The position numbers and the translations under genes are program-made. This document shows positions 21,111-62,765 of a stretch of DNA of 64,000 nt, one piece after another. The stretch covers positions 124,001 through 188,000 of the IMG/VR virus record IMGVR_UViG_3300043399_000297; one strand, given 5' to 3'. Below the pieces are notes generated by a model, which was not told the origin of the DNA, ran no database searches, and saw only the letters and a program-made list of their open reading frames with translations. The first letter of the stretch is position 1. Each line of letters begins with the position of its first letter.

Positions 21111-21190
21111 TAAATACTTTCAAGCTCAAGAGAGTTTATGCAGTCCCCGCTGCGTAGAGGCTAGAACCCTCTTATATAAGGAGAAAACAA
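21111..21190 (+). promoter_or_regulatory. late promoter plus structured 5' leader
   Basis: TAAATA at 21111-21116; stems AAGCTC/GAGTTT, TATGCAG/CTGCGTA and GAGG/CCTC precede the SD. Confidence 0.5.
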
Positions 21191-22459
21191 ATGGGACGCC
21201 CACTAAAGATTGCTAAAGCACAAGCAGTCATTACAATCACAAACACAACTAACTCAACTGATCTAGTTACAACTAATGCAAACTTCACTAATCTTGGTAT
21301 TATTGCAGGTATGCCGTTTGTAACTGCATCGAACATCGGCGGGCTTGTCGCCGGAACACTATATTGGATTCTTAAGGTAGTAAACTCAGGAAATAACAGC
21401 ACTTTCACTGTTTCTGAAACTCCGTTAAATGCTAATGTAAATAGCACACCCAAAGATTTGTCAACTGCATCAGGCACTGTTTCAACTACAGTTGGTCCAG
21501 TTGATGCGTATTTCAATAATCCAAACGGTCCTCAATGGCCAGCAACAAATGCCAATACTTACTCAGTAGTAGGCGGTAATACATCAATTTATGGCAAACA
21601 AGTACTTTGCAATGTTGCGCTAGGTCAAACAGGTTCAGGTGTAATCTATTCATACACTACGAGCCCTGTAATTGGTGGTCTAGGAACAGATTTTGCCAAC
21701 ACTAGCGGTACAGGCACTGTTATTCAGTATGTGCAAGCAAATGGTGTTCCAGCTACTCTTGGATATGTAAGCAGCAATGCTCAGCCAAACATTGAGATTT
21801 CAAATGCAACTGCAACTGGTAATTTCTTGACAACAGTAGGTAATGCATTAACTTTGAGTTTAAATCTTCCGGTTACTCTAACAGCCGATATCGGTGGTCT
21901 AACAGCAGGAACTACTTATTTCGTTAAAACAACTCCAAATGCAACTGCATTTTCAGTGTCATTAACGCCGGGCGGAGCTAATGTTGGATTAAGCAGCGAA
22001 GATGCAACTTCTTACGCAAATCAGGACTTGGTCACTTTCGCAGCTAACGCAGCAGCAGCTACTTCAGCCGCTGCTTATATCTTTGCAACACCAGAAGCAG
22101 GATATATTGTTCGTCAGAAGGGCAAGCAGAAGTATCTTGTTAAGGGAGCCACATCAGGTCTCGTTGGACAGTGCTACACTGCAAACGTTGCAAATACTGC
22201 AATGCTTCCAAACACTATGACTATCACTGCAACCTATGCCAACAGTGCAACAGTTAAGGTTCAGAGTTTGAGCGATCACACTGCTGAATTGTTCACTGCA
22301 ACATCAGGTGGACCTGCAACAAGCACTGACAACATTAACAATGCTGCCCCTGCTTTTGCAACGTTCAACACCGCTGTTGCTGCTAACTCGACTCAGTTGT
22401 ATGATTTCAGTTATGGCAACGCACAACCTTACCCGATCGTACAAATCGGCAACGCATAA
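21191..22459 (+). CDS. virion structural protein
   Basis: Late promoter, strong SD, two copies of a GG..AGT.Y(W/F)(I/V)...F.VS.T beta module. Confidence 0.7.
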   Translation: MGRPLKIAKAQAVITITNTTNSTDLVTTNANFTNLGIIAGMPFVTASNIGGLVAGTLYWILKVVNSGNNSTFTVSETPLNANVNSTPKDLSTASGTVSTTVGPVDAYFNNPNGPQWPATNANTYSVVGGNTSIYGKQVLCNVALGQTGSGVIYSYTTSPVIGGLGTDFANTSGTGTVIQYVQANGVPATLGYVSSNAQPNIEISNATATGNFLTTVGNALTLSLNLPVTLTADIGGLTAGTTYFVKTTPNATAFSVSLTPGGANVGLSSEDATSYANQDLVTFAANAAAATSAAAYIFATPEAGYIVRQKGKQKYLVKGATSGLVGQCYTANVANTAMLPNTMTITATYANSATVKVQSLSDHTAELFTATSGGPATSTDNINNAAPAFATFNTAVAANSTQLYDFSYGNAQPYPIVQIGNA

Positions 22460-27951: not shown

Positions 27952-28158
27952 ATGGGATATCGTGTTCTTAATCGCACTGATCGTGACAAGTATCAGCCTC
28001 GCAAGGGTCTTGAAGGTCCGTTCTTCTATCCTAATGGTCGTGTGACATATTACGATCCGATTGAGGGCGCGTATTGGGACCCTACAACCGACTTTTACCT
28101 CTCTTATGAGGAACAAGTTGAGCTACAAAATATGATTTTTGACAAACTTAAGGCTTGA
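27952..28158 (+). CDS. small hypothetical phage protein (LEGPF...YYDP.EGAYWDP)
   Basis: GAGG SD before ATG 27952. Confidence 0.65.
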   Translation: MGYRVLNRTDRDKYQPRKGLEGPFFYPNGRVTYYDPIEGAYWDPTTDFYLSYEEQVELQNMIFDKLKA

Positions 28159-28183
28159 CATTTCAAGCCTACCGTTGTATAGT
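28155..28183 (+). promoter_or_regulatory. sigma70-type promoter TTGACA-N17-TATAGT
   Basis: Near-consensus elements. Confidence 0.75.
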
Positions 28184-28214
28184 GATACATAAGCTTAAAA
28201 CTTAGGAGTAAATT

Positions 28215-29468
28215 ATGGCTCGTCGTGCAATCGTTACTAAGGTTCGCAAGCCCAAGAAGACCACAGTTCGTGTTGGTAAGAAGGGTGTTGCCCTCGCTTC
28301 GTCTGGTAATACACTTACGAAGGATTTTCGCCCTAAGGATAGTGATGTTCTGCGGTATGGTCCTGAACCCAGCTTCACTGACAGCCAGCCCATTGAGGAA
28401 CAGCGTCAGTCTATTCTTTCCGACGCATATAATTGGTATTCGCGTTTCTGCACTCACAAGGATTCCAAGCTGTTCCTAATTCAGTATCTTGAAGATACTA
28501 ATATGAGCAAGGATGTTGTCAAGTTAGTGCGTAAGGCCCCTGACAATCGTATGGTTACGACTGCTGGTTGGGCTGCTCGTTGCGCTACTCGTGGTCTTGT
28601 TCTGACCGAGAAGCAGAAGAATTATATTCAGGCTTGTGTTGATCGTCTAGTTGACTTTGCTAAGGCTGGTGTTAAGGACGAGCCTGCCGAAGGCGAAGAA
28701 ACTGTTGTTGAAAAGCCCAAGCGCACTGTCAACATTCAGGAAGTGATGCGTGAAAAGGCTGATGAAGCACTGAGTGATGTTGAAGCACTGTTTGATGAAT
28801 TCATCACTGCCGGTTGCCCCAAGGACTTTTCTGTAGACAAGAAGATCATTGGTTTTCTGACTAGCCGCAATGTTCTCCCCCAACACATTGCCAACGCTAT
28901 CAAGCGTTATACTAGCCTGCTTAACGAGTATAATGAAGCAGTTGCTGGTAACGATGACCAAGTCAAGGAAGCATATTCCAGCTATGGTAAGATGCAGTTG
29001 CGCTATACCGTCAAGTTTATTGAAGATATCATTGCAGAACTGAATGGTTATATCGGTCTTAAGCAGGCTACGAAGAAGGTTCGTGCTAAGAAGGTTGTTC
29101 CGGTTGAGAAGGTCGTGGCGAAGGTAAAGTTCCAAAAAACCAACGATGCACTTGGTATCACAAGTGTCAGTCCCGTCAAGCTGCATCAGTGCGCCGAGGC
29201 GTTCCTGTATGATACTGCTAAGCGCAAGATCATTTGGTTGGTTGCTGACGAGTATAGTAAGTGCTTGATTGTCAAGGGCAATGCAGTAATTGGGTTTGAC
29301 AAGAAAAAGAGTATGAGCAAGACTGTTAGGAAACCGGAAGAGTTCCTTAAGGGAATGATGAGCGCAAGTCGCCCGAACACTCGCAAGATGATTGACGATA
29401 TCAAGGCAGTTGCAGCGATCCCGAATGGTCGATTCAATGAGAATATTGTTATCCTTAAGGTTTGGTGA
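28215..29468 (+). CDS. hypothetical basic phage protein (417 aa)
   Basis: Strong SD, biased codon usage, C-terminal KTVRKPEE...NGRFNEN..ILK motif. Confidence 0.8.
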   Translation: MARRAIVTKVRKPKKTTVRVGKKGVALASSGNTLTKDFRPKDSDVLRYGPEPSFTDSQPIEEQRQSILSDAYNWYSRFCTHKDSKLFLIQYLEDTNMSKDVVKLVRKAPDNRMVTTAGWAARCATRGLVLTEKQKNYIQACVDRLVDFAKAGVKDEPAEGEETVVEKPKRTVNIQEVMREKADEALSDVEALFDEFITAGCPKDFSVDKKIIGFLTSRNVLPQHIANAIKRYTSLLNEYNEAVAGNDDQVKEAYSSYGKMQLRYTVKFIEDIIAELNGYIGLKQATKKVRAKKVVPVEKVVAKVKFQKTNDALGITSVSPVKLHQCAEAFLYDTAKRKIIWLVADEYSKCLIVKGNAVIGFDKKKSMSKTVRKPEEFLKGMMSASRPNTRKMIDDIKAVAAIPNGRFNENIVILKVW

Positions 29469-30072
29469 TCGTCTTGCACGAATCCCCGTGCCATCTGACG
29501 AAATTACCCTTGTTAACTGTCTTCCCGCAGTGTTCGCAAGTTAATTGATACTCTGGTTTGCACATTGGATTATTTTTCCCGGTCTTGTTAGCGTTTAGTG
29601 CCGACAGGGCCGGGTTTTTCTTCCCACGCATTGCACTCGGTTTCCCATACATTGGATTCTTCTCGCCTAAGTTTTCCGAGTTGCGTCTACTAAGTTCGGG
29701 GTTCTTGGTACCGAACATAGGATGTTTTTCTCCCTGGCGTTTTCTATTTCTCTCTGCTGTATCAGGGCGAGACTTCCCAAAACAAGGATGATTTACCCCT
29801 GCTTCGGAACCGCCTGTTTCCGGTATACGGTTGGCCCACTCATCGCTTTCTACAACGTTCCATAGTTCGGAATAATATACGCCCCAGGTTGTCAGTTCTT
29901 CTTTAGTTTGGCACTCTTTCAATATCACTGTAGTTACATCATTTCCGTGTTCAAGGATATGAGGTATCCAATCAATGCCGGAACCTTTATATTTGAATGG
30001 ATCTTTTTCTGTTTTACCTAGGTATTGTAGACCGGTTTTGTTGTGGGTCTTCTTATACAAATAAATAGTCAT
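29455..30072 (-). CDS. free-standing GIY-YIG-type (Seg-like) homing endonuclease with NUMOD3-like repeats and a C-terminal zinc knuckle
   Basis: IYLY...YLGKT..Y.GSG..W...WAN..PETG; NPMYGK/HPMFG repeats; CEHC...RWH...C. Confidence 0.8.
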   Translation of the reverse strand: MTIYLYKKTHNKTGLQYLGKTEKDPFKYKGSGIDWIPHILEHGNDVTTVILKECQTKEELTTWGVYYSELWNVVESDEWANRIPETGGSEAGVNHPCFGKSRPDTAERNRKRQGEKHPMFGTKNPELSRRNSENLGEKNPMYGKPSAMRGKKNPALSALNANKTGKNNPMCKPEYQLTCEHCGKTVNKGNFVRWHGDSCKTITKP

Positions 30073-30140
30073 TGCTGATACTCCGCTATAGTGTTAGAGT
30101 GGTTAGATGCGTCAACATCGTGAACCACACTTTTATTTAG
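30073..30140 (-). promoter_or_regulatory. late promoter plus conserved two-hairpin leader of an endonuclease gene, copy 1
   Basis: Homologous to 33040-33107 and 61575-61640, with compensatory base changes. Confidence 0.8.
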
Positions 30141-30204
30141 TCCTTTTTACTTGACTTAGAACCATTAATCTAATATATTAAACAAATCATCAAAAGGAGT
30201 TATC

Positions 30205-30645
30205 GTGGGAAACAATGTCAATTTAAGTGAGTATGCAAAGTTTGTGTTGGCTGTATGCAGTGAACCTAGCAAGAATCTTACTGCGTATATGGATCGGCTT
30301 GACGAATTAGATGCAAACTATGATCCGAAGCTTATGGGGTATGGTCCGGACATCAATGTTCCTTTGCTATTAACCGCAGCTTTGGGTTTGGGATCGGAAT
30401 CCGGAGAATTCCAAGAAATCGTAAAGAAGGTCTATTTCCAAGGAAAACCAATGACGGATGAAACCGTCCATCACGCCAAGCGTGAACTCGGGGACATTAT
30501 CTGGTATTGGGCTAACGCTTGTAATGCGCTTGGTCTTGATCCTGACGATGTTATTGCAGAGAATGTCAAGAAGCTTGAAGCACGATATCCGGGTGGCAAG
30601 TTTGATGTTCACTATTCAGAAAATAGAAAGGACGGAGACCTGTAA
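30205..30645 (+). CDS. mazG: MazG-like NTP pyrophosphohydrolase
   Basis: GLGSESGEFQEIVKK...ELGDIIWY...N..KL.ARY. Confidence 0.9.
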   Translation: MGNNVNLSEYAKFVLAVCSEPSKNLTAYMDRLDELDANYDPKLMGYGPDINVPLLLTAALGLGSESGEFQEIVKKVYFQGKPMTDETVHHAKRELGDIIWYWANACNALGLDPDDVIAENVKKLEARYPGGKFDVHYSENRKDGDL

Positions 30646-30854
30646 TGGGTCTCGGTCCAAGTGTCTGTGGTAGATGTAGGGTATTTTCTAATTACGTGCC
30701 CAATGTGATTCCTAATAAGCGGGGATATTGGGTATGCCCAGTATGTGACCTAGAAACACACGATAGTCTATTTGAATTTACAAGGGACGATCAGCTAGTT
30801 ATAGAAATCAATACACAAATTATTAGAGAGAATAGAGGTCAGAGCGTTTCCTGA
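30645..30854 (+). CDS. small zinc-ribbon protein
   Basis: CGRC...CPVC. Confidence 0.55.
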   Translation: MGLGPSVCGRCRVFSNYVPNVIPNKRGYWVCPVCDLETHDSLFEFTRDDQLVIEINTQIIRENRGQSVS

Positions 30855-30879
30855 TAAATAAGATTAATAGGAAACAACT

Positions 30880-31665
30880 ATGGCAGCAGACCTTTTAGCA
30901 ACACCAAACAATTATGATCTTCAAGAATACAAGAATGCTCTCTTTGAAAATCTACGCCTGCGTTTAGGCGGAGATATCATTGATCTTGAGTTGGATCCGC
31001 AGCACTATGAAGCTGCCTACAACTATGCTATCAAACTATACAGGCAAAGAGCGCAGAACGCAACGATTGAAAGCTATACGCTTTTTATGGTTGAAAAGAA
31101 CGTATATGAGTATACGCTTCCGGAAGAATTCATCAACGTAAGATGCTTGTATCGTAGAACGGTGGGCTTGGAAACAGGTCCATCGTCCACTGCGTTTGAT
31201 CCATTCTCAAGTGCAATTCTCAACACCTATCTACTCAACTACAACTACACGGGCGGCCTTGCTACATACGACTTCTACGCTGGATATGTAGAGCTTACAG
31301 CACGTATGTTCGGTGGCTATCTCAATTATACATTCAACCCAGTAACCAAACTCTTGAAGATCGTGAGAGACTTTAAGGGCACAGGAGAGCGTGTTTTGAT
31401 TTGGGCTGACGTTCAGCGTCCTGAGTTAGAATTGTTGCAAGACCCGGGTGCCGGTGTATGGATCGGTGACTATATTCTTGCTATTCTAAAAGGGATCATT
31501 GGCGAAGCCCGTGAAAAGTTTCAGTCAATCGCCGGACCTGGTGGAGGCACATCATTAAATGGTTCTGCAATGAAGGCTGAAAGTAAGGCCGATCAGGAAC
31601 GGTTAATTATGGAACTTAAGGCTTATGTGGACTTTTCACAACCCCTGACATGGATACAGGGCTAA
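30880..31665 (+). CDS. neck / head-tail adaptor protein (T4 gp13-like)
   Basis: LRLG..IIDLELD, GEAREKF...GG.SLNG; late box at 30855. Confidence 0.85.
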   Translation: MAADLLATPNNYDLQEYKNALFENLRLRLGGDIIDLELDPQHYEAAYNYAIKLYRQRAQNATIESYTLFMVEKNVYEYTLPEEFINVRCLYRRTVGLETGPSSTAFDPFSSAILNTYLLNYNYTGGLATYDFYAGYVELTARMFGGYLNYTFNPVTKLLKIVRDFKGTGERVLIWADVQRPELELLQDPGAGVWIGDYILAILKGIIGEAREKFQSIAGPGGGTSLNGSAMKAESKADQERLIMELKAYVDFSQPLTWIQG

Positions 31666-31711
31666 ATTAACTTGGATTCACGGATGAGGACTACTATCGG
31701 GCAACACAAGG

Positions 31712-31740
31712 TTGACATTTTTAAAGAAATGTAATATCAT
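31712..31740 (+). promoter_or_regulatory. sigma70-type promoter TTGACA-N17-TATCAT, leaderless into ATG 31747
   Basis: ATG 6 nt after the -10; no SD. Confidence 0.7.
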
Positions 31741-31746
31741 ATAAGA

Positions 31747-32397
31747 ATGACAAATAAAATTATCTCCATCTCCGGATTGATAGGATCAGGAAAAGACACC
31801 GCCGCCGACTATCTCTGCACGGTACATGGTTTCAAGCGTATGAGCTTTGGTGCCAGTCTCAAGGACGCAGTAGCAGTCATTTTTAATTGGAATCGCGAAC
31901 TACTAGAAGGGTCAACTAAGACTAGCCGAGAATGGCGAGAAGAAGTTGACACTTGGTGGGCAGATCGTTTAGGCATTCCCAATCTAACTCCTCGTTGGGT
32001 ACTACAGCAATGGGGAACAGAAGTTGCTCGTAAGGGTTTCCATGATGAAATCTGGGTTGCGAGTGTAGAGAACAAACTTCTCAACAATAAAGATGATATC
32101 GTAATCACTGATTGTAGATTCCCCAACGAACTTACTGCTATCAAGAACGCAGGTGGTATCACAATGCGAACTCATAGAGGCAAGGCTCCCAATTGGTTAG
32201 ATATCGCTGCAATTATAAACACTACTACGGACGAAGCCGTAAAGATTCACTGTCTAGAGCAAATTGAAAAGTTCAACGTTCATGCTAGCGAGTATTCTAG
32301 CGTTGGTCTAGCGTATGATTATCATCTAGACAACAATAAGACGGTAACAGAATTGCACGAACAAATTGAGAGTATTTTACGCCAATCTACAATTTGA
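31747..32397 (+). CDS. deoxynucleoside monophosphate kinase (T4 gp1-like)
   Basis: GLIGSGKDT P-loop, TPRWVLQQWGTE, ITDCRFPNE, HASE. Confidence 0.92.
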   Translation: MTNKIISISGLIGSGKDTAADYLCTVHGFKRMSFGASLKDAVAVIFNWNRELLEGSTKTSREWREEVDTWWADRLGIPNLTPRWVLQQWGTEVARKGFHDEIWVASVENKLLNNKDDIVITDCRFPNELTAIKNAGGITMRTHRGKAPNWLDIAAIINTTTDEAVKIHCLEQIEKFNVHASEYSSVGLAYDYHLDNNKTVTELHEQIESILRQSTI

Positions 32398-33039
32398 ATT
32401 ATGCCAACGATTGAAGTTGCCCATGCCCGCTACTTTCTTATGACAGTGCGGGCATTCAAATACCGGGTCCTTTTTACCATACCTAACACTCTTTTCACCC
32501 AATTGTGAATTTCTTCTTTTCTCGTTTGATTCGGGAGTTTGAGTTTTTCCAAACATATGGTTATCAGGGCCTAATTGACAGGTCTTCATCCTAGCACTTT
32601 GATCTGGTCTTTTTCTACCAGTGAGTTTTTTACTATGCTCGGGTCTTTTTCTACCTATTTTAGGTAAGGCAGCTTTTCTCTTGTGTTCTTCTGTGTGTTT
32701 TCTACCGGCTTGTGCAATTCTAAGTTTTTCTTTAGTTTTTGCTGATCTGGGAACGCCAACCTTCCCACCAACTCCCCCGCCGGTTTCTGGAATTTTATTA
32801 GCCCATTCTGTGCTGTCTGCAACACTCCATAGCTTGCTGTAATATCTGCCCCAGTAGTTTAATTCTTCGTTGGATTGGCATTCCTTGAGGATTTCAGTAG
32901 TTACATCACACCCGTGTTCTTTGATATGCGGTACCCAATCTGTACCAGAACCCATATACTTATACGGGTCTTGGATAGTTTTTCCGAGATACTTGAATCC
33001 GGTTTTGTTGTGGGTTTTCTTGTACAAATAAATAGTCAT
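32377..33039 (-). CDS. free-standing GIY-YIG-type (Seg-like) homing endonuclease with NUMOD3-like repeats and a zinc knuckle; paralogue of 29455-30072
   Basis: MTIYLYKKTHNKTG..YLGKT N-terminus nearly identical to copy 1; CPHC...RWH..C. Confidence 0.8.
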   Translation of the reverse strand: MTIYLYKKTHNKTGFKYLGKTIQDPYKYMGSGTDWVPHIKEHGCDVTTEILKECQSNEELNYWGRYYSKLWSVADSTEWANKIPETGGGVGGKVGVPRSAKTKEKLRIAQAGRKHTEEHKRKAALPKIGRKRPEHSKKLTGRKRPDQSARMKTCQLGPDNHMFGKTQTPESNEKRRNSQLGEKSVRYGKKDPVFECPHCHKKVAGMGNFNRWHNSNCRLA

Positions 33040-33107
33040 AGCTGATACTCCTTGACAGTATTAGAGTAGTTGGGGATTGCCGTCCCGCGAACTACATCTT
33101 TATTTAT
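33040..33107 (-). promoter_or_regulatory. late promoter plus conserved two-hairpin leader, copy 2
   Basis: See copy 1; the TAAATA overlaps the stop of the 33100-33456 gene. Confidence 0.8.
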
Positions 33108-33456
33108 GCCAATCTACGAGCAAATCTCCGCGCTTCCAAGTTATCTCTTTGCGCTTCACTACCTCAACGCAATTGAGACAAATTGACCTAAGGTTAGTTA
33201 GATTGACATTAGTTAAGTCTCCGTCTATGTGGAATACAAGCATTTGCGTTGGGTAAGACGCTTTGAATCCGCAACATTCACATATTGTCTTTTTTTTGTA
33301 TCCAGCCTTCTCCCATATATAAAGTTGTGGCTTTTTCTTGGCCCTTTTCTTTCCGCAACTATCACATATACTGCGATAGTAGGTTTTGCCATTGCGGATG
33401 TAATTTATTGCGCAATAGTTCTTATTACATTCCTTGCATATGGGTCTTTTCAACAT
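33100..33456 (-). CDS. zinc-binding HNH-like protein
   Basis: Several CxxC pairs plus FHIDGDLTNVNLTNLRSICLNC. Confidence 0.7.
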   Translation of the reverse strand: MLKRPICKECNKNYCAINYIRNGKTYYRSICDSCGKKRAKKKPQLYIWEKAGYKKKTICECCGFKASYPTQMLVFHIDGDLTNVNLTNLRSICLNCVEVVKRKEITWKRGDLLVDWHK

Positions 33457-33519
33457 AACACTATTTAGTCATTTTCACCTTTAAAGGTTCCGTTAACCAC
33501 ACTTTTTTATGTTTTTTGC

Positions 33520-33595
33520 TAAATATCTCTAGAACCTTAGTAATCGTTACTAGGGCAGGTGGTAAACCTCATAATCATACGAAGGAAAAAATAAT
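33520..33595 (+). promoter_or_regulatory. late promoter plus two-hairpin leader of the tail sheath gene
   Basis: TAAATA 33520-33525; stems CCTTAGTAA/TTACTAGGG and AGGT/ACCT. Confidence 0.5.
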
Positions 33596-36500
33596 ATGGC
33601 ACTCGTTTCACCAGGTGTAGAAGTTACAATCATTGACGAATCTCAATATCTTCCAGCACCAACTAATACTATTCCATTCGTCTTGCTTGCAACTGCACAA
33701 GATAAAGCAAATCCAACTGGCACAGGCGTAGCATCAGGTACTACAGCCGCAAATGCTGGTAAGTTGTTCCAAGTAACAAGTCAGCGTGATCTTGTTGCTC
33801 TTTATGGAAACCCATTCTTCTACACAACTGCAAACGGTACTCCAATTCAGGGCTATGAACTTAATGAATATGGGCTGCTTGCTGCTTATTCTGCATTGGG
33901 TATCACAAATCGTGTATACTGCTTACGTGCAGACATTGATCTTGCAAGCTTAGTAGGACAAACTGGTAGACCAACTGGTAACCCTGCAAATGGTACATAT
34001 TGGTTAGACACTACTACATCAACTTGGGGCATTTATGAATTTGATTCAGTAACAGGAACATTTGCTCTGCAAACACCAATTGTAATTACTGATCCTGATC
34101 AAATAAGCGGAAGTTATCCCATTAACTCTTTGGGTGTAATTGGAAGTTATGCAGTAATTGCAATTCCTACATATGATTGGCCAAGCCAAACAGCCGCCGG
34201 ACAATTCTTTTATAAAAATGATGTTAATCAGTGGGTAAGAATTGGTACCGCTGAATGGTTAAACTCTTGGCCTACTGTTCAGGGCACACTAGCCCCAGGT
34301 TCTTTAACAATGAATAATGAGCTTACTATTACTTTAAGTGGTATGGCAACAGTGTCAGTATCAGTAAGTTCTTCGCCCGACAATACTGTAGCAGATTTGG
34401 TGAATCAAATCAATACATTTGCAAACGGTGGTAATTTGGGAAGTTTATTTGCTGCTTCAGTGAATGGTAAATTAGTTCTTTATTCCAGACAAACAGGCGG
34501 CGATATTACATCATCTGTTCCTTATGAGGTAACAATTGGCGGCACGGCAGGACTATTGACACAATTAGGAATTTCTGCGGGAACATATTATCAGCCTATA
34601 GTTTCTTATGGAACATCCGCTCAGCAGCCATTATGGCAACAAGGACAATCATATCCTGCACCAACTGGATCAGTTTGGATCAAGATAGGAACTGCAGGTT
34701 CAGGTTTAAATTCAGTAGTTTCTGAATTTAATTCTACTACTGCTAATTGGGTGGCAAAAACGGTATCTTACGCTACTGCTGACTGGAGCGCGATAGGCAG
34801 TCTCGATTCATCAGGTGGTAAAAATATTCCAGCAGGAACCGTATACGTACAATATGATTACGATACGAGAGTAACAGGTGGTATTATACAGAAATATCCG
34901 GCAACTCCTATCTATTATTGGGAAAGACTTGCAGAAGGCCCTACTGTAGTTACTGGGACTAACACCTCACCCTCATTCACAAATGGACCATATGATTTAT
35001 TAGTACAAATATCTGTTCCGGGAACGTCAACATTAGGCAATTATTACACGGTCGTCCTCGGCGATAACACTGATGCAGAAGATTTTGTAAATGCTTGGAA
35101 CACTGCTGCTATCCCATATACTATAGCATCTTTAACTTCGGCAGGAGCAATACAATTAACACACACGCAAGGAGGCGTGATTGTTCTAAGCGATATTCTT
35201 TGGGATACGACTGGTGTAAGTTCTGGTTTACTTGAAGAAGCCGGATTTGTACCGGGATCGACCTTAGGTGCAAAATACGGACCTGCTGTTATGACTATGC
35301 TTAATGCCGGTCAGGGCCCAAGCTATCCTGATTCTACTACAAGTGGAGTTGGATCAGGTTTCGAAATGACAATCAGAGGTCAATATCAAACTTATTATTT
35401 CGAGACAGATAACTTCGTTGATGCCGGCGGCGGATATGCAGTTGGTGACACTATAACAATCAATGGTTCATACTTAGGTGGTTCATCTGGAACAAATAAT
35501 TTGGTTGTTGCTGTTACAAGTGTAGACGCAGGAAATGGCAACGCTGTTACAGGCATTGCATACGTGTCAGGAACTGCTGCATTAACCTATCAAGTACAGT
35601 TATCAAATTGGGTAGAGTTTGATATGACTGCTAACGAGGGTTCACCTACACAGGCTCCTGATGATTTGACCAATTGGTTCTATAGTGTTGTTGATGAAGT
35701 AGACATTATGGTTAATACCACTAGCGGTTGGTATGGCTATAGAAACGTTTCATATGATAATAACGGTTTCCCCCTTCCTTCAGGTATTAATACTACTGAT
35801 CCAAACGGACCTATTGTAAGTGCAACTAAACCAACCACTCAATCAGATGGTACAGCACTTTCATACGGTGATCTTTGGATTGATACTAGTGATGTTGAAA
35901 ATTATCCAATTATTAATCGTTGGCAGTCTGTTAGCGGCGTAAATCAATGGGTAAGAATTGATAACACTGACCAAACATCATCAAAAGGTGTATTATTTGC
36001 TGACGCACGTTGGGCTACAAATGGAACTACTAATCCAGCAAACGATCCGATTCCGTCTATTGTGAGTTTGTTAACAAGCAATTACTTGGATCTTGGAGCT
36101 CCTGACGAAGATTTGTATCCAGTTGGTATGTTGTTGTTCAACACTCGACGTTCAGGATACAACGTCAAGCAATATCGTGTTAATTATTTTAACACTGATA
36201 GATTCCCTGATCAACCCATTCCTGATCAAACAGATGCTTGGGTAACTATTTCAGGCAATCAGTCAAACGGTAGTCCATATATGGGTCGTAAGGCACAGCG
36301 TGCAGTTGTAGTTAAGGCACTACGTGCAGCAATTGATACTAATAGCGCAATTCGCGACGAAGATAATCCATTCAACTTAACTGCTTGCCCTAACTATCCT
36401 GAATTGCAGCCTAATATGGTTGTTCTAAACAACGATAGAGGAAATACAGGTTTCATCGTCGGTGATACTCCAATGAGACTTCCAGATGATGCTACTGCAA

Positions 36501-59990: not shown

Positions 59991-60914
59991 GTGAAGAATC
60001 GGTTGTGGGTTGAGAAATATCGCCCATCTAAAATAGATGATTATGTGTTTGTTGACGATAGACAAAAGAACACAGTTGAGCAGTGGATCAAAGACGAGTC
60101 TATTCCCCATCTATTGCTTTCAGGCGATCCCGGCACAGGTAAAACTACATTAGCTAAGGTTCTTATCAATGAACTTAATGTAGAAGACTTTGACGTTCTA
60201 GAAATCAATGCTAGTAGAGAAAATGGCATTGACAACCTTAGAGAAAAAATCAATGGCTTTGTGCAGACTATGCCTTTCGGCAAGTTCAAGGTTGTTTTGT
60301 TAGACGAAGCTGACTATCTTACTCAGCCAGCACAGGCAGCATTGCGTAATGATATGGAAGCATATCACGAAACAGTCAGATACATTTTAACTTGTAACTA
60401 TCAGCACAAAATTATTCCTGCGTTGAAAAGTCGTTGTCACGAATTCCATATCGCAAAGCCCGATATCACGGAATACACAACTCGTGCCGCTACTGTTCTT
60501 ATAAACGAAAACATTGAGTTTGATCTAGATGACCTTGACACATATGTTCGTGCCTGTTATCCCGATCTAAGAAAGTGTTTGAATCAGTTACAGCAGAATA
60601 GCATCACTGGTTCTCTTGCCAAGCCACAGTCAACTGGTAGTGGCGAAGATGAACTATTGGTCGCTGCTACAGAATTGTTCAAGAGTGGTAAGATTCTTGA
60701 AGGTCGTCAGCAATTGTTACAATATATCAGTCTATATCCAACTCGGGTAGAAGATGTGGTAAGATGGGCATATGACAATCTTGATCTTTGGGGTAAGACT
60801 CAAGAGAGCAAAGATGCTTCAATTGTGATCATTCGCAATACGTTAGCAAACCTGCCCTTAGTAGGGATACCTGAAATAAGCATTGCGGCCATGATGGTTG
60901 AATTATGTAGCTAA
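59991..60914 (+). CDS. clamp-loader large subunit (T4 gp44 / RFC-like AAA+)
   Basis: [30 protein letters not shown]. Confidence 0.95.
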
Positions 60915-61574
60915 TTCCCAACCCTTGACTGATTTGTAATATTTTGTGCGGTTGACCAAATTATAAATATTACTGGCTGAGGCACTGATGTAATTACAGA
61001 AATCGTATTTTGTCATGGTAACTACTTCTTGAGTTTCTTTGTTTCTAAATGAATATAAAGTGTGATCATATTGGTGGTTACCGGCACCTGTTCTATTTCT
61101 ACTTCTAGTCGCTCGTACTTCCGGAGAACTCATACGCTTCTTAAACGCCTCACGACTTTTTTGGCTTTTTGCAGGGTGTCTTTCACCCAAAGACAGCATT
61201 CTCTCGGATTGCAGTGTTCGGTATTTTTCTAATTTGTTGTGACTGTTCTCGCCTGATATTCTTAGAATATGCTCTTCGGTATGCTTATATCCGCTACATC
61301 CGTCTCCACCGTCGGTGAGATTTCGTAGTATGCCGGTGTCATTATCTACTCTACCGTACCATCGTATCATCCGTCTTTCTAACGCAAACGCTCCGGTTTC
61401 GGTGAGATTTTGTTCAAGAAATACAATTCTTGAAAGGTCATCTGGAACCTTAAGTTTTCCGTGATTAGCAAACGCTCGGTTCCCGTTGCCTTTTCCTATG
61501 TAATAAGGGGTTCCTGCTTTAGCTGTAGTTGAGTCATTTTTTCGTAGATATGCGTAGACATAATAAATATTCAT
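60903..61574 (-). CDS. free-standing GIY-YIG-type homing endonuclease (different clade from the other two)
   Basis: YYVYAYLR...PYYIGKG.GNRA...E...I..YGR...[10 protein letters not shown]; helical repeats; KGW C-terminal DNA-binding motif. Confidence 0.8.
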
Positions 61575-61640
61575 GCTGATTCTCCTTAACAGAATTAGAG
61601 TGAGTAGGAATGCCAGTTCCGTGACTCACAACTATTTATA
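61575..61640 (-). promoter_or_regulatory. late promoter (TATAAATA) plus conserved two-hairpin leader, copy 3
   Basis: See copy 1. Confidence 0.8.
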
Positions 61641-61653
61641 CTAGGAGGTTATT

Positions 61654-61968
61654 ATCCGTTACTTATTGATTAGTTTCCTCAGAAAGATGGGTGGACAGAT
61701 TGACGAAATGGTCAGTGTTGGCAAAAGAGTTCGTGATAGTGATAAGATCAATGCTAATGTCATTCTTGACTTTGCTGATAAAAAGATTATTAAGTGTATC
61801 ATTGAGGGCAATGAACACGACTCTACCTTTGAGCAACTAAGAGATTATTATTATAAGGTCTATCCTAACTTAATTGATCAGTTAGAGCGTGAGGCTAATA
61901 TTACTGCAATGCAAGAGCAGCCAATGAATAGACAGCAGCGTAGAGCGCAAGAAAGTAAAAAGAAGTAA
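61654..61968 (+). CDS. hypothetical protein; start either a non-canonical ATC at 61654 or TTG at 61666
   Basis: AGGAGG SD at 61643-61648; in-frame stop at 61642-61644. Confidence 0.65.
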   Translation: MRYLLISFLRKMGGQIDEMVSVGKRVRDSDKINANVILDFADKKIIKCIIEGNEHDSTFEQLRDYYYKVYPNLIDQLEREANITAMQEQPMNRQQRRAQESKKK

Positions 61969-61989
61969 ATGGGGCTTTCGCCCCATTTA
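61966..61989. terminator. hairpin between convergent genes, likely a bidirectional terminator
   Basis: TAAATGGGGC-TTTC-GCCCCATTTA. Confidence 0.8.
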
Positions 61990-61991
61990 CT

Positions 61992-62765
61992 TTATGAATA
62001 CATATTCAATATGTGTTCAATAATTTCGTGACGCCTAATATCCTTATTAGTAAATTCACAAGATACCATACCTGGCACACGATACTCTATAATTTTAGAT
62101 TTCAAATCTAATAATCCGTTGTCGGGAGTTTTTCTGTCGGTTTGTTCAACGTCGCCAGTAATGACAATCTTACTGCCCTCACCAATTCTTGTCATTAGCA
62201 TTTTCATCTGACTAGGCGTTGCATTCTGGGCTTCATCCAGAATAATCCAACTGTGCTTAAAGTTACGGCCTCTGCAAAAGGCTAGTGGGGTTATTTCAAT
62301 AACTTGTTCATCTATCATATACTCCAATTCTTTAGTTGAGTAAAACTCTTTCAAAACATCAAACAATGGTCTGACCCACGGTTCCATCTTTGAGTTCAAG
62401 TCGCCGGGTAAGAACCCGTGCTTTTCATCATCAACAGCAACCGCGGGTCTTGTTAGTAGAATCTTGTCACACTGACCACTACGCATAGCTTGAATTGCTG
62501 CAAGCATTGCAAGATATGTTTTACCAGTTCCCGCAGGGCCACTCACCACGACTATATCTGTGTCAGGGTCAGTTAATGCGATTATATATTTTTCCTGATT
62601 TACCGATTGCGGTATTAGTTCGATGGACTTTTTGGTCCTCTTGGGACTGGCTTGATTGAAGTCAATTGTCTTTGATTCATTACTATAGAAAGGTTTACTT
62701 TCATAATCTTTTTTCTGTGTGTATCGTGTGTCTTTTCTTAGTGCGCTTGTTTTTCTCTTTGTCAA
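61992..62765 (-). CDS. phoH: PhoH-like ATPase (likely TTG start at 62765)
   Basis: GPAGTGKT, LTRP, GFLPG, RGRNF, ILDEAQN, TGD..Q.D; AGGAGA SD before the TTG. Confidence 0.93.
   Translation of the reverse strand: MTKRKTSALRKDTRYTQKKDYESKPFYSNESKTIDFNQASPKRTKKSIELIPQSVNQEKYIIALTDPDTDIVVVSGPAGTGKTYLAMLAAIQAMRSGQCDKILLTRPAVAVDDEKHGFLPGDLNSKMEPWVRPLFDVLKEFYSTKELEYMIDEQVIEITPLAFCRGRNFKHSWIILDEAQNATPSQMKMLMTRIGEGSKIVITGDVEQTDRKTPDNGLLDLKSKIIEYRVPGMVSCEFTNKDIRRHEIIEHILNMYS

What the first reader, a model, noticed from the sequence alone, without database searches (positions are those of the whole stretch)
29455..29468. All three leader-bearing endonuclease cassettes sit antisense and overlap the stop codon of a + strand gene
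Seen: tail-to-tail overlaps of 14 nt (28215-29468 gene), 21 nt (dNMP kinase, 32377-32397) and 12 nt (clamp loader, 60903-60914), with no terminator between the genes. At the other end, the TAAATA box lies within about 10 nt of the next native signal: a TTGACT promoter at 30151, the stop of the 33100 gene, and an SD at 61643. The cassette is therefore exactly promoter + leader + ORF and takes its stop codon from the neighbour's antisense strand. Inference: a stereotyped insertion mode at gene 3' ends. The neighbouring gene is the likely cleavage target, and its convergent transcription may silence the nuclease.
Basis: partly seen in the sequence, partly recalled or inferred. Interest (0 to 1): 0.7.

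Follow-up and report, generated by a model that had tools for sequence, protein, structure and literature searches.

The report
Antisense homing-endonuclease cassettes at gene ends
In this uncultured freshwater jumbo phage and many of its environmental relatives, selfish nuclease genes with a shared late promoter and structured leader sit backwards against the end of a conserved gene, unlike the same-direction layout of the model phage T4.

Summary
The three minus-strand ORFs overlap the stop regions of a 417-aa gene, the dNMP kinase and the clamp loader by 14, 21 and 12 nt. All three are GIY-YIG nucleases.

The 244-kb contig holds seven covariance-model hits to the leader, all on the minus strand. 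Their tails lie -21 to +2 nt from a plus-strand stop.

In 91 environmental cassette clusters:
- 65 of 86 are antisense to the local majority, against 15.7% of other genes.
- 44 of 62 convergent tails overlap, against 19 of 74 other convergent pairs.

The cassettes are mobile:
- They are absent from the same junctions in about 160 related loci.
- One relative keeps a deleted remnant.
- HEG2 travels with the last ~20 dNMP kinase codons as a mosaic tract.

The stop-codon claim holds for cassettes 1 and 3. At cassette 2 the dNMP kinase takes its tail and stop from the cassette.

The TAAATA box is the phage's ordinary late promoter. Silencing by convergent transcription could not be tested, because no RNA run was listed.

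I read this as a new antisense variant of free-standing homing endonucleases, probably selected to restrain nuclease expression.

The parts
29455..30072 (-). HEG1: GIY-YIG + NUMOD3 + C-terminal zinc-finger endonuclease ORF (205 aa)
   Evidence: ORF. NUMOD3 hit. The model of the N-terminal domain best matches the I-TevI catalytic domain (TM 0.64/0.69). Absent between p417 and MazG in relatives.
30073..30144 (-). Cassette 1 late-promoter box (TAAATA 30139-30134), hairpin (30128-30098), SD GGAG (30084-30081)
   Evidence: Covariance-model hit at genome 154061-154144, 85.6 bits. Covarying stems.
29455..29468 (.). 14-nt tail-to-tail overlap of HEG1 with the 417-aa gene (28215-29468, +)
   Evidence: The HEG1 stop is the complement of cTTAag in the conserved ILK codons. 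The neighbour ends KVW*, against KAF* in cassette-free relatives.
30151..30179 (+). Sigma70-like promoter TTGACT-N17-TATATT for MazG (30205-30645)
   Evidence: This spacer is absent from cassette-free relatives, where MazG follows p417 after 10-20 nt.
32377..33039 (-). HEG2: GIY-YIG endonuclease ORF (220 aa), 52% identical to HEG1
   Evidence: phrog_314, homing endonuclease, 3e-16. Present only in the window and L204, with a remnant in L205/L206.
33040..33111 (-). Cassette 2 leader and late-promoter box (TAAATA 33106-33101)
   Evidence: Covariance-model hit, 91.5 bits. An identical 70-nt leader heads an HNH-type nuclease at the same site in L069/L269/L225.
32335..32397 (+). Last ~20 codons of the dNMP kinase (31747-32397), which travel with HEG2. 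Includes the 21-nt overlap at 32377-32397.
   Evidence: 93-97% nt identity to L205 here, against 70-80% in the backbone. Mosaic alignment. The tail is ILRQSTI*, against IINR*.
33100..33456 (-). Resident HNH-like gene (118 aa), conserved in all relatives. Its stop sits inside cassette 2's promoter box.
   Evidence: 60-80% identity at this position in about 80 related loci. It overlaps the kinase tail directly where no cassette is present.
60903..61574 (-). HEG3: GIY-YIG endonuclease ORF (223 aa)
   Evidence: The profile of its family hits GIY-YIG chains in PDB (1.6e-4). Three of 20 members hit Pfam GIY-YIG. Absent between clamp loader and orf100 in 79 of 80 related loci.
61575..61645 (-). Cassette 3 leader and late-promoter box (TATAAATA 61640-61633)
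   Evidence: Covariance-model hit, 87.4 bits. Sequence.
60903..60914 (.). 12-nt tail-to-tail overlap of HEG3 with the clamp loader (59991-60914, +)
   Evidence: The HEG3 stop is the complement of the conserved Leu305 TTA codon. The clamp loader ends ELCS*, against ELTS*, at the same length.
61643..61968 (+). SD AGGAGG and orf100, which in relatives starts at or inside the clamp-loader stop (ATGA)

Best explanation
The three ORFs are free-standing homing-endonuclease genes. Each is a self-contained late transcription unit made of the phage's own late-promoter box, a conserved ~55-nt structured leader, and a nuclease ORF.

Each unit is inserted backwards into the almost non-existent spacer after the stop codon of a conserved plus-strand gene. 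The nuclease's functional part ends at the junction. The ORF then runs a few codons into the neighbour's antisense strand, or the neighbour runs into the cassette, so the two reading frames share 0-44 nt.

The cassettes spread by homing. The nuclease is expected to cut the cassette-free allele in or near the neighbour's 3' end. Repair then copies the cassette together with a short flanking tract.

I infer that the antisense orientation is selected. It uncouples the nuclease from read-through transcription and translational coupling in the phage's one-directional operons, and it keeps the cassette's late promoter from driving downstream phage genes. Nuclease mRNA therefore comes only from its own late promoter, and it is opposed by incoming transcription. 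The net effect would be late, low expression.

Shown: the anatomy, nuclease identity, mobility, orientation bias, one mosaic tract, and late-promoter identity.
Inferred: the cleavage site, and the reason for the orientation.
For: - Coordinates and overlaps.
- Nuclease families.
- Seven of seven leader hits on the minus strand of a contig that is about 85% plus-strand.
- All 11 leader hits in 160 related loci are antisense to the anchor gene.
- Environmental survey: 65 of 86 antisense (p 1e-34) and 44 of 62 tails overlapping (p 1.5e-7).
- Cassette-free junctions in relatives.
- HEG2 remnant with the promoter kept and the nuclease domain deleted.
- Mosaic tract in the dNMP kinase.
- HEG2 is 98-100% identical in other metagenomes, where the backbone is about 85-90%.
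- ATAAATA precedes about 30 plus-strand genes and is strongly concentrated in intergenic DNA.
- The overlap covers only the variable tail after the last zinc-finger Cys in 14 of 15 cases.
- Ordinary accessory ORFs at the same junctions are sense-oriented (156 plus, 28 minus).
- In T4, all homing endonuclease genes but segD are sense-oriented, and none has an early promoter (PMC2988022).
Against: - No transcript data exist, so neither insulation nor attenuation is shown.
- Two of the seven neighbours on this contig carry late boxes themselves. Keeping the nuclease out of early transcripts therefore cannot be the whole reason.
- About a quarter of environmental leader cassettes are co-directional with their neighbours.
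- Overlap lengths are not clearly different from simple run-on into a neighbour (median 12.5 nt observed, 17 nt expected after truncation, p 0.065). The overlap itself may have no function.
- My gene calls are a greedy ORF heuristic that cannot see overlaps above 45 nt.
- Clusters at 85% identity are not guaranteed to be independent insertions.
- Co-conversion is shown for one cassette only.
Confidence: 0.6

Rival explanations
1. Convergent transcription from the neighbouring gene actively silences the nuclease, through polymerase collision or double-stranded RNA. This silencing is what the layout is for.
For: No terminator lies between the tails. The plus-strand neighbours have strong promoter matches (28155, 31712, 59938). 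Two neighbours outside the window are late genes that would be transcribed at the same time as the nuclease.
Against: No RNA evidence. For the three window cassettes the neighbours have sigma70-type promoters and the nucleases have late promoters. The two transcripts may therefore be separated in time rather than colliding. This reading is not exclusive of the best explanation.
Confidence: 0.3
2. The leader hairpin works mainly on the other strand. Read in the plus direction it is a hairpin followed by a U-rich tract (complement of the A-rich promoter box), which would terminate or insulate host-phage transcripts that have crossed the antisense nuclease gene. The module would then be bifunctional.
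For: In 106 unique leaders the stems show 1256 Watson-Crick pairs. There are 15 A.C pairs, which are G.U on the complementary strand, and only 1 G.U on the nuclease-sense strand. Cassette 1 is followed by a new sigma70-like promoter for MazG that cassette-free relatives lack. In the related clade this leader occurs only on antisense cassettes, while sense-oriented nucleases have other 5' regions.
Against: The terminator scan did not call these sites. The U-tract starts 2-3 nt after the stem and is weak at cassette 3. There, orf100 follows with only an SD and no promoter, so strong termination would be harmful. Seven of the 15 A.C cases sit at one stem position next to conserved sequence. Only one of the seven cassettes on this contig has a good sigma70 match beside it; three others show only weaker sigma70-like or late-box candidates.
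Confidence: 0.25
3. Orientation and overlap are neutral by-products of extreme genome compaction and of where the nucleases happen to cut, with no selected role.
For: Spacers in cassette-free relatives are 0-20 nt. Overlap lengths fit simple run-on.
Against: Unrelated nuclease families (GIY-YIG of two types, HNH_3) at many different targets share the antisense orientation. Ordinary accessory ORFs inserted at the same junctions are 85% sense-oriented. A neutral process would give roughly equal orientations.
Confidence: 0.12
4. The minus-strand ORFs are fixed, domesticated resident genes of this phage lineage, not mobile elements.
For: One minus-strand nuclease-like gene, 33100-33456, is indeed resident and conserved in all relatives.
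Against: HEG1 and HEG3 are absent from the same junctions in all but the near-identical contig. HEG2 is in 2 of about 80 related loci, plus a remnant. A different nuclease occupies the same site in other relatives.
Confidence: 0.02

Closest known systems
Free-standing seg (GIY-YIG) and mob (HNH) homing endonuclease genes of phage T4, spreading by intronless homing (review PMC2988022)
   Same: The same nuclease families lie between conserved genes and are sporadic among relatives. They have middle or late promoters rather than early ones. The target lies in a neighbouring gene, and flanking markers are co-converted.
   Different: In T4 every such gene except segD has the orientation of its neighbours. 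Here 7 of 7, and about 75% of environmental cassettes, are antisense, with tails overlapping the neighbour and one shared structured leader.
T4 segD
   Same: A GIY-YIG gene antisense to its neighbours, genes 23 and 24.
   Different: segD has no promoter of its own, is flanked by terminators, and is thought to be nearly untranscribed. These cassettes carry a consensus late promoter and an SD, and have no terminators at the tail.
'Fractured gene' endonuclease cassettes of marine metagenomes and Aeh1 mobE (Dassa et al. 2009, PMC2677866)
   Same: Free-standing GIY-YIG or other nuclease genes with a TATAAATA box and a 5' UTR hairpin. Their 3' end overlaps the neighbouring ORF by 6-69 bp. The element supplies termini for its neighbours.
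   Different: Those cassettes are co-directional, split a host gene in two, and overlap the START of the downstream piece. Here the neighbours stay whole, the orientation is opposite, and the overlap is stop-to-stop.
PeSL composite promoter-terminator cassettes of T4-type phages (PMC2839356, PMC4122927)
   Same: A short conserved promoter + stem-loop module repeated around a genome. It can serve as shared homology for swapping the gene behind it. Here an identical leader heads two unrelated nucleases at one site.
   Different: PeSLs carry early promoters, flank diverse ORFs of hyperplastic regions in the sense orientation, and are not tied to nucleases. I read only the titles and abstracts of these papers.

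Membership tests
Free-standing homing endonuclease gene | Encodes a nuclease of a homing-endonuclease family | tested here: met
   HEG1/2: the model best matches the I-TevI catalytic domain, with NUMOD3 and phrog_314. HEG3: the family profile hits GIY-YIG chains at 1.6e-4 and Pfam GIY-YIG in 3 of 20 members.
Free-standing homing endonuclease gene | Sporadic presence at a site that is otherwise syntenic in relatives | tested here: met
   absent from the three junctions in nearly all of 160 related loci. Remnant in L205/L206.
Free-standing homing endonuclease gene | Lies between genes, not inside an intron or intein | tested here: met
   Neighbouring ORFs are full length and colinear with those of relatives. 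No group I intron hit in Rfam.
Free-standing homing endonuclease gene | Co-conversion of flanking sequence with the gene | tested here: met
   Cassette 2 only: mosaic breakpoint near 32335. Cassettes 1 and 3 have no second carrier to compare.
Free-standing homing endonuclease gene | Site-specific cleavage of the allele that lacks the gene | not testable with these tools
   Needs protein and substrate DNA.
GIY-YIG nuclease superfamily | GIY...YIG strands, then conserved Arg, Glu and Asn, in the alpha/beta fold | tested here: met
   HEG3 family invariants are Y-Y..YYIGKG, R33, E66, N85. The HEG1/2 family has IYLY..YLGKT, with a conserved E and N81. Its fold is I-TevI-like at pLDDT 81, but it lacks an invariant Arg at the usual place, and Pfam GIY-YIG did not score it.
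T4-type late transcription unit | TATAAATA-like box used as the phage's late promoter | tested here: inconclusive
   The box is present at all cassettes. The same motif sits 4-30 nt before about 30 plus-strand genes. I did not search for a gp55/gp33-type factor, and there are no transcript data.
'Fractured gene' cassette (Dassa 2009) | The nuclease gene splits a host gene into two co-directional pieces | tested here: not met
   Neighbours are intact and the orientation is opposite.
Rfam RNA families | Leader matches a curated family | tested here: not met
   No hit at gathering score. Nothing meaningful at E up to 10.

The most novel reading that the evidence does not exclude
The conserved unit of promoter box, covarying hairpin, SD and the first four codons (M-x-I-Y) may be a portable 'antisense expression adaptor' that works on both strands. 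On one strand it would be the late promoter and 5' UTR of the nuclease. On the other it would be a hairpin + U-tract that stops or insulates the host-phage transcript. It would also be the shared homology arm through which unrelated nuclease genes (GIY-YIG, HNH) are exchanged at a site. If so, the adaptor rather than any one nuclease is the persistent element.
Probability: 0.25. Interest if true: 0.8.

Novelty: new variant of a known kind. Interest (0 to 1): 0.62.

Why it matters
Homing endonuclease genes are the main selfish elements of large lytic phages, and they mark boundaries of genetic exchange. The textbook picture from T4 is sense-oriented genes whose expression is held down by promoter choice and RBS-hiding hairpins.

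A large uncultured clade shows a different recurrent solution: antisense placement, stop-to-stop overlap, and one shared leader across unrelated nuclease families. This offers several things:
- a simple sequence signature for finding such elements in metagenomes;
- predicted cleavage regions, namely the 3' ends of the adjacent genes;
- a natural case for testing how antisense placement controls a toxic gene.

The overlap also explains why degraded cassettes leave 3' remnants. The neighbour's last codons and stop lie inside them.

Tried and rejected
- Megablast of 28000-34000 and blastn of the leader against cultured phages found nothing. The nearest cultured relatives are PA5oct-like phages at 51% clamp-loader identity, with no cassettes at the syntenic site.
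- RNA evidence: no RNA run was listed. The DNA runs are kept as contigs only, so they showed presence and the repeated leader but no transcripts.
- The terminator scan did not support terminators at the tails, and it did not call the leader complement.
- I looked for closely related nucleases in different contexts to define the cassette's 3' end. Every pair at or above 75% identity shared its context, so this gave nothing.
- I tested whether every cassette brings a promoter for the next plus-strand gene. Only cassette 1 has a good sigma70 match. Three others show only weaker candidates: 9/12 matches at 198468 and 233747 and an unscored one at 208017, with late-promoter boxes before the next gene at 198468 and 233747.
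- I tested whether overlaps are shorter than chance run-on. The result was not significant.
- Pfam alone did not identify the GIY-YIG domain in HEG1-3. Family profiles and a structure model were needed.
- Single-linkage clustering of the nucleases merged GIY-YIG and HNH types through shared C-terminal modules, so N-terminal domains were classified separately.

Full report
**What is there.** The window is bases 124001-188000 of a single 244,022-bp viral contig. It has 38.8% G+C and an estimated completeness of 71%. Two freshwater metagenome runs hold it whole. Its nearest cultured relatives are PA5oct-like jumbo phages, with 51% clamp-loader identity and the same clamp...PhoH(-) synteny. From about 22 kb onward nearly all genes are on the plus strand.

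The three ORFs in the finding exist exactly as described. They are 29455-30072, 32377-33039 and 60903-61574, all on the minus strand. They overlap the 3' ends of 28215-29468 (417 aa, phrog_11903), 31747-32397 (dNMP kinase, PF21448) and 59991-60914 (AAA+ clamp loader) by 14, 21 and 12 nt.

**What the ORFs are.** HEG1 and HEG2 are 52% identical to each other, and HEG3 is 22% identical to HEG1.
- HEG1 carries NUMOD3 repeats.
- HEG2 matches the homing-endonuclease PHROGs 314 and 655.
- A model of the HEG1/2 N-terminal domain (pLDDT 81) best matches the I-TevI catalytic domain, with TM 0.64/0.69.
- The HEG3 family profile hits GIY-YIG chains in PDB at 1.6e-4, and three of its 20 members score Pfam GIY-YIG.

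**The shared 5' module.** Each ORF is preceded by a (T)ATAAATA box, a hairpin, the string CTCTAAYNCT-N5-GGAGNATCAGC, and an ATG 0-3 nt later.
- An alignment of 78 leaders gives 13 pairs, 10 of them with compensatory changes.
- No Rfam family matches.
- The first codons, ATG-NNN-ATT-TAT, are also conserved, even between GIY-YIG and HNH_3 nucleases. The conservation is therefore at the nucleotide level.
- The box is the phage's ordinary late promoter. Of 52 plus-strand ATAAATA copies, 37 lie in the 6.4% of DNA that is intergenic, mostly 4-30 nt before plus-strand genes.
- The plus-strand neighbours p417, MazG, dNMP kinase and clamp loader have sigma70-like promoters scoring 10-11 of 12.

**Is the layout more than chance?**
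- A covariance model of the leader finds seven copies on the contig, all on the minus strand. Four are GIY-YIG type, one of them frameshifted, and three are HNH_3 type.
- Their tails lie +1, -14, -21, -12, +2, 0 and -8 nt from the stop of a plus-strand ORF.
- I deduplicated the environmental hits to 91 clusters and used a greedy ORF caller. Of 83 cassettes with a called downstream neighbour, 62 are convergent with it, and 44 of those 62 overlap it by 4-44 nt.
- Of 86 cassettes, 65 are antisense to the local majority, against 15.7% of 814 other genes (p 1e-34).
- Only 19 of 74 other convergent pairs overlap (Fisher p 1.5e-7).
- In 160 loci fetched through the clamp loader and the dNMP kinase, all 11 model hits are antisense to the anchor gene.
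- In those loci ordinary accessory ORFs are 156 plus to 28 minus. The four sense-oriented nuclease genes found have other 5' regions.

**Are they mobile?**
- In 79 of 80 clamp-loader loci, orf100 starts at or within about 30 nt of the clamp-loader stop, often as an ATGA overlap. In some loci a sense-oriented small ORF intervenes. Only the near-identical contig has HEG3.
- MazG follows p417 after 10-20 nt in relatives, and none has HEG1.
- HEG2 occurs only in the window and L204 (74% identity). L205 and L206 keep the promoter box joined directly to the last 47 codons, with the leader and nuclease domain deleted.
- Contigs from other metagenomes hold HEG2 at 98-100% identity, while the flanking backbone matches at about 85-90%.
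- The window's dNMP kinase body resembles cassette-free L199, but its last ~20 codons resemble the HEG2 carriers L204 and L205. Identity there is 93-97%, against 70-80% elsewhere, with the breakpoint near 32335. This is the signature of homing with co-conversion, and it places the likely cut in the kinase's 3' end.
- At the same site, L069, L269 and L225 carry an HNH_3 nuclease behind a leader identical over 70 nt to that of HEG2. The leader therefore acts as shared homology for exchanging the ORF.

**Who lends the stop codon?**
- Cassette 3: the nuclease stop is the complement of the conserved Leu305 TTA of the clamp loader. The clamp loader keeps its length but ends ELCS* rather than ELTS*.
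- Cassette 1: the stop is the complement of cTTAag in the conserved ILK codons. The neighbour ends KVW* rather than KAF*.
- Cassette 2: the relation is reversed. The kinase's native IINR* is replaced by ILRQSTI*, encoded antisense to the nuclease's last zinc-finger Cys and tail.
- The 33100-33456 gene is a conserved resident HNH-like gene. In cassette-free relatives it already overlaps the kinase tail-to-tail. In the window its ORF now ends inside the cassette's promoter box (WHK*), whereas L204 keeps the native VDY*.
- Among nucleases ending in the zinc finger, the overlap covers only the variable 3-8-residue tail in 14 of 15 cases.
- Overlap lengths are compatible with simple run-on into the neighbour's antisense strand.

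**How it probably works.** The evidence establishes late-promoter-driven mobile nuclease cassettes inserted antisense at gene ends. Why they are antisense is inference. The T4 review states that all T4 homing endonuclease genes but segD are sense-oriented, that none has an early promoter, and that invading elements must fit the host's transcription programme. Antisense placement would achieve the same restraint by geometry. There would be no read-through or coupled translation of the nuclease, and its late promoter would not drive downstream phage genes.

**An unexpected observation.** On the nuclease-sense strand the leader stems show 15 A.C pairs but only 1 G.U among 1272 pairs. The hairpin may therefore also matter in the opposing transcript, where a U-rich tract follows it. 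The terminator scan does not call it, and cassette 3 argues against strong termination.

**Comparison with what is known.** The closest precedents are:
- the T4 seg and mob genes;
- segD, the single antisense exception in T4;
- the co-directional 'fractured gene' cassettes, with a TATAAATA box, a 5' UTR hairpin and a 6-69 bp overlap with the downstream gene;
- PeSL promoter-terminator cassettes.

Literature searches found no description of systematic antisense, stop-to-stop placement.

**Limits.**
- Gene calls are heuristic and cap overlaps at 45 nt.
- Clusters may share insertions by descent.
- Co-conversion is shown for one cassette only.
- There is no biochemical or transcript evidence.

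Noticed in passing
L281:1694-2345 (genome 207293-207944, minus strand; outside the window): A fourth GIY-YIG leader cassette is broken by a frameshift in an A7 run between the GIY and YIG motifs. Its TAG stop abuts the TAA of the plus-strand ORF 206708-207292 with no gap and no overlap. It could be a pseudogene, a sequencing error or slippage.
   Followed up: partly
window 33100-33456 (-); L220:3619-4272: The resident HNH-like gene is conserved in about 80 related loci. In L220 it is fused in frame behind a leader-bearing GIY-YIG domain, giving a 217-aa chimera.
   Followed up: partly
L205:3637-3800 and L206: HEG2 remnant. The late-promoter box is joined directly to the last 47 codons. The part kept is the part that encodes the dNMP kinase's last codons and stop on the other strand.
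   Followed up: yes
window 61643-61660 (+); also L164, L170: orf100 appears to start at ATC (ATT in L164) after a strong AGGAGG, aligned to the ATG of its homologues (M/I-R-Y-L-L). This would be a non-AUG start conserved in three lineages.
   Followed up: no
leader stems, e.g. window 30098-30128, 33065-33095, 61600-61630: Non-Watson-Crick exceptions in 106 leaders are 15 A.C against 1 G.U on the nuclease-sense strand. That is, wobble pairs occur on the complementary strand.
   Followed up: partly
window 30061-30072, 33028-33039, 61563-61574 and all loci L001-L118: The first four codons (ATG NNN ATT TAT, M-x-I-Y) are conserved across unrelated nuclease folds (GIY-YIG and HNH_3). The conserved module therefore extends into the ORF.
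   Followed up: partly
window 33040-33107: Metagenome contig depth rises from about 21 to 440-530 over the leader in four runs, including a wastewater sample. Loose ends diverge on both sides, so the leader is a highly repeated module in these communities.
   Followed up: no
L069:8958-9560, L269:3623-4190: The HNH_3 nuclease behind the HEG2-type leader is frameshifted inside its HNH motif in L069 and L269, but intact in L225.
   Followed up: no
L219:430-500: A cassette-free relative whose p417 also ends KVW*. It has a 50-nt spacer with short matches to the HEG1 3' end, possibly the footprint of a lost cassette.
   Followed up: no
L284-L287: The leader pattern occurs on four MAG contigs, three assigned to Bacteroidota (one Haliscomenobacter, 148 kb). 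This is a weak hint about the host, or it reflects mis-binned phage DNA.
   Followed up: no
window 21117-21193 (+): Match to Rfam freshwater-2 RNA (63.2 bits, gathering score 49.9), just upstream of the ORF at 21191.
   Followed up: no
window 61963-61992: A 13-bp hairpin with T-runs sits between the convergent native genes orf100 and PhoH. It looks like a bidirectional terminator, in contrast to the terminator-free nuclease tails.
   Followed up: no
L280:622-1245 (genome 195621-196244, minus strand): A further antisense HNH + NUMOD3 nuclease gene has a TATAAATA box but no structured leader. It lies 25 nt from the stop of its plus-strand neighbour.
   Followed up: partly
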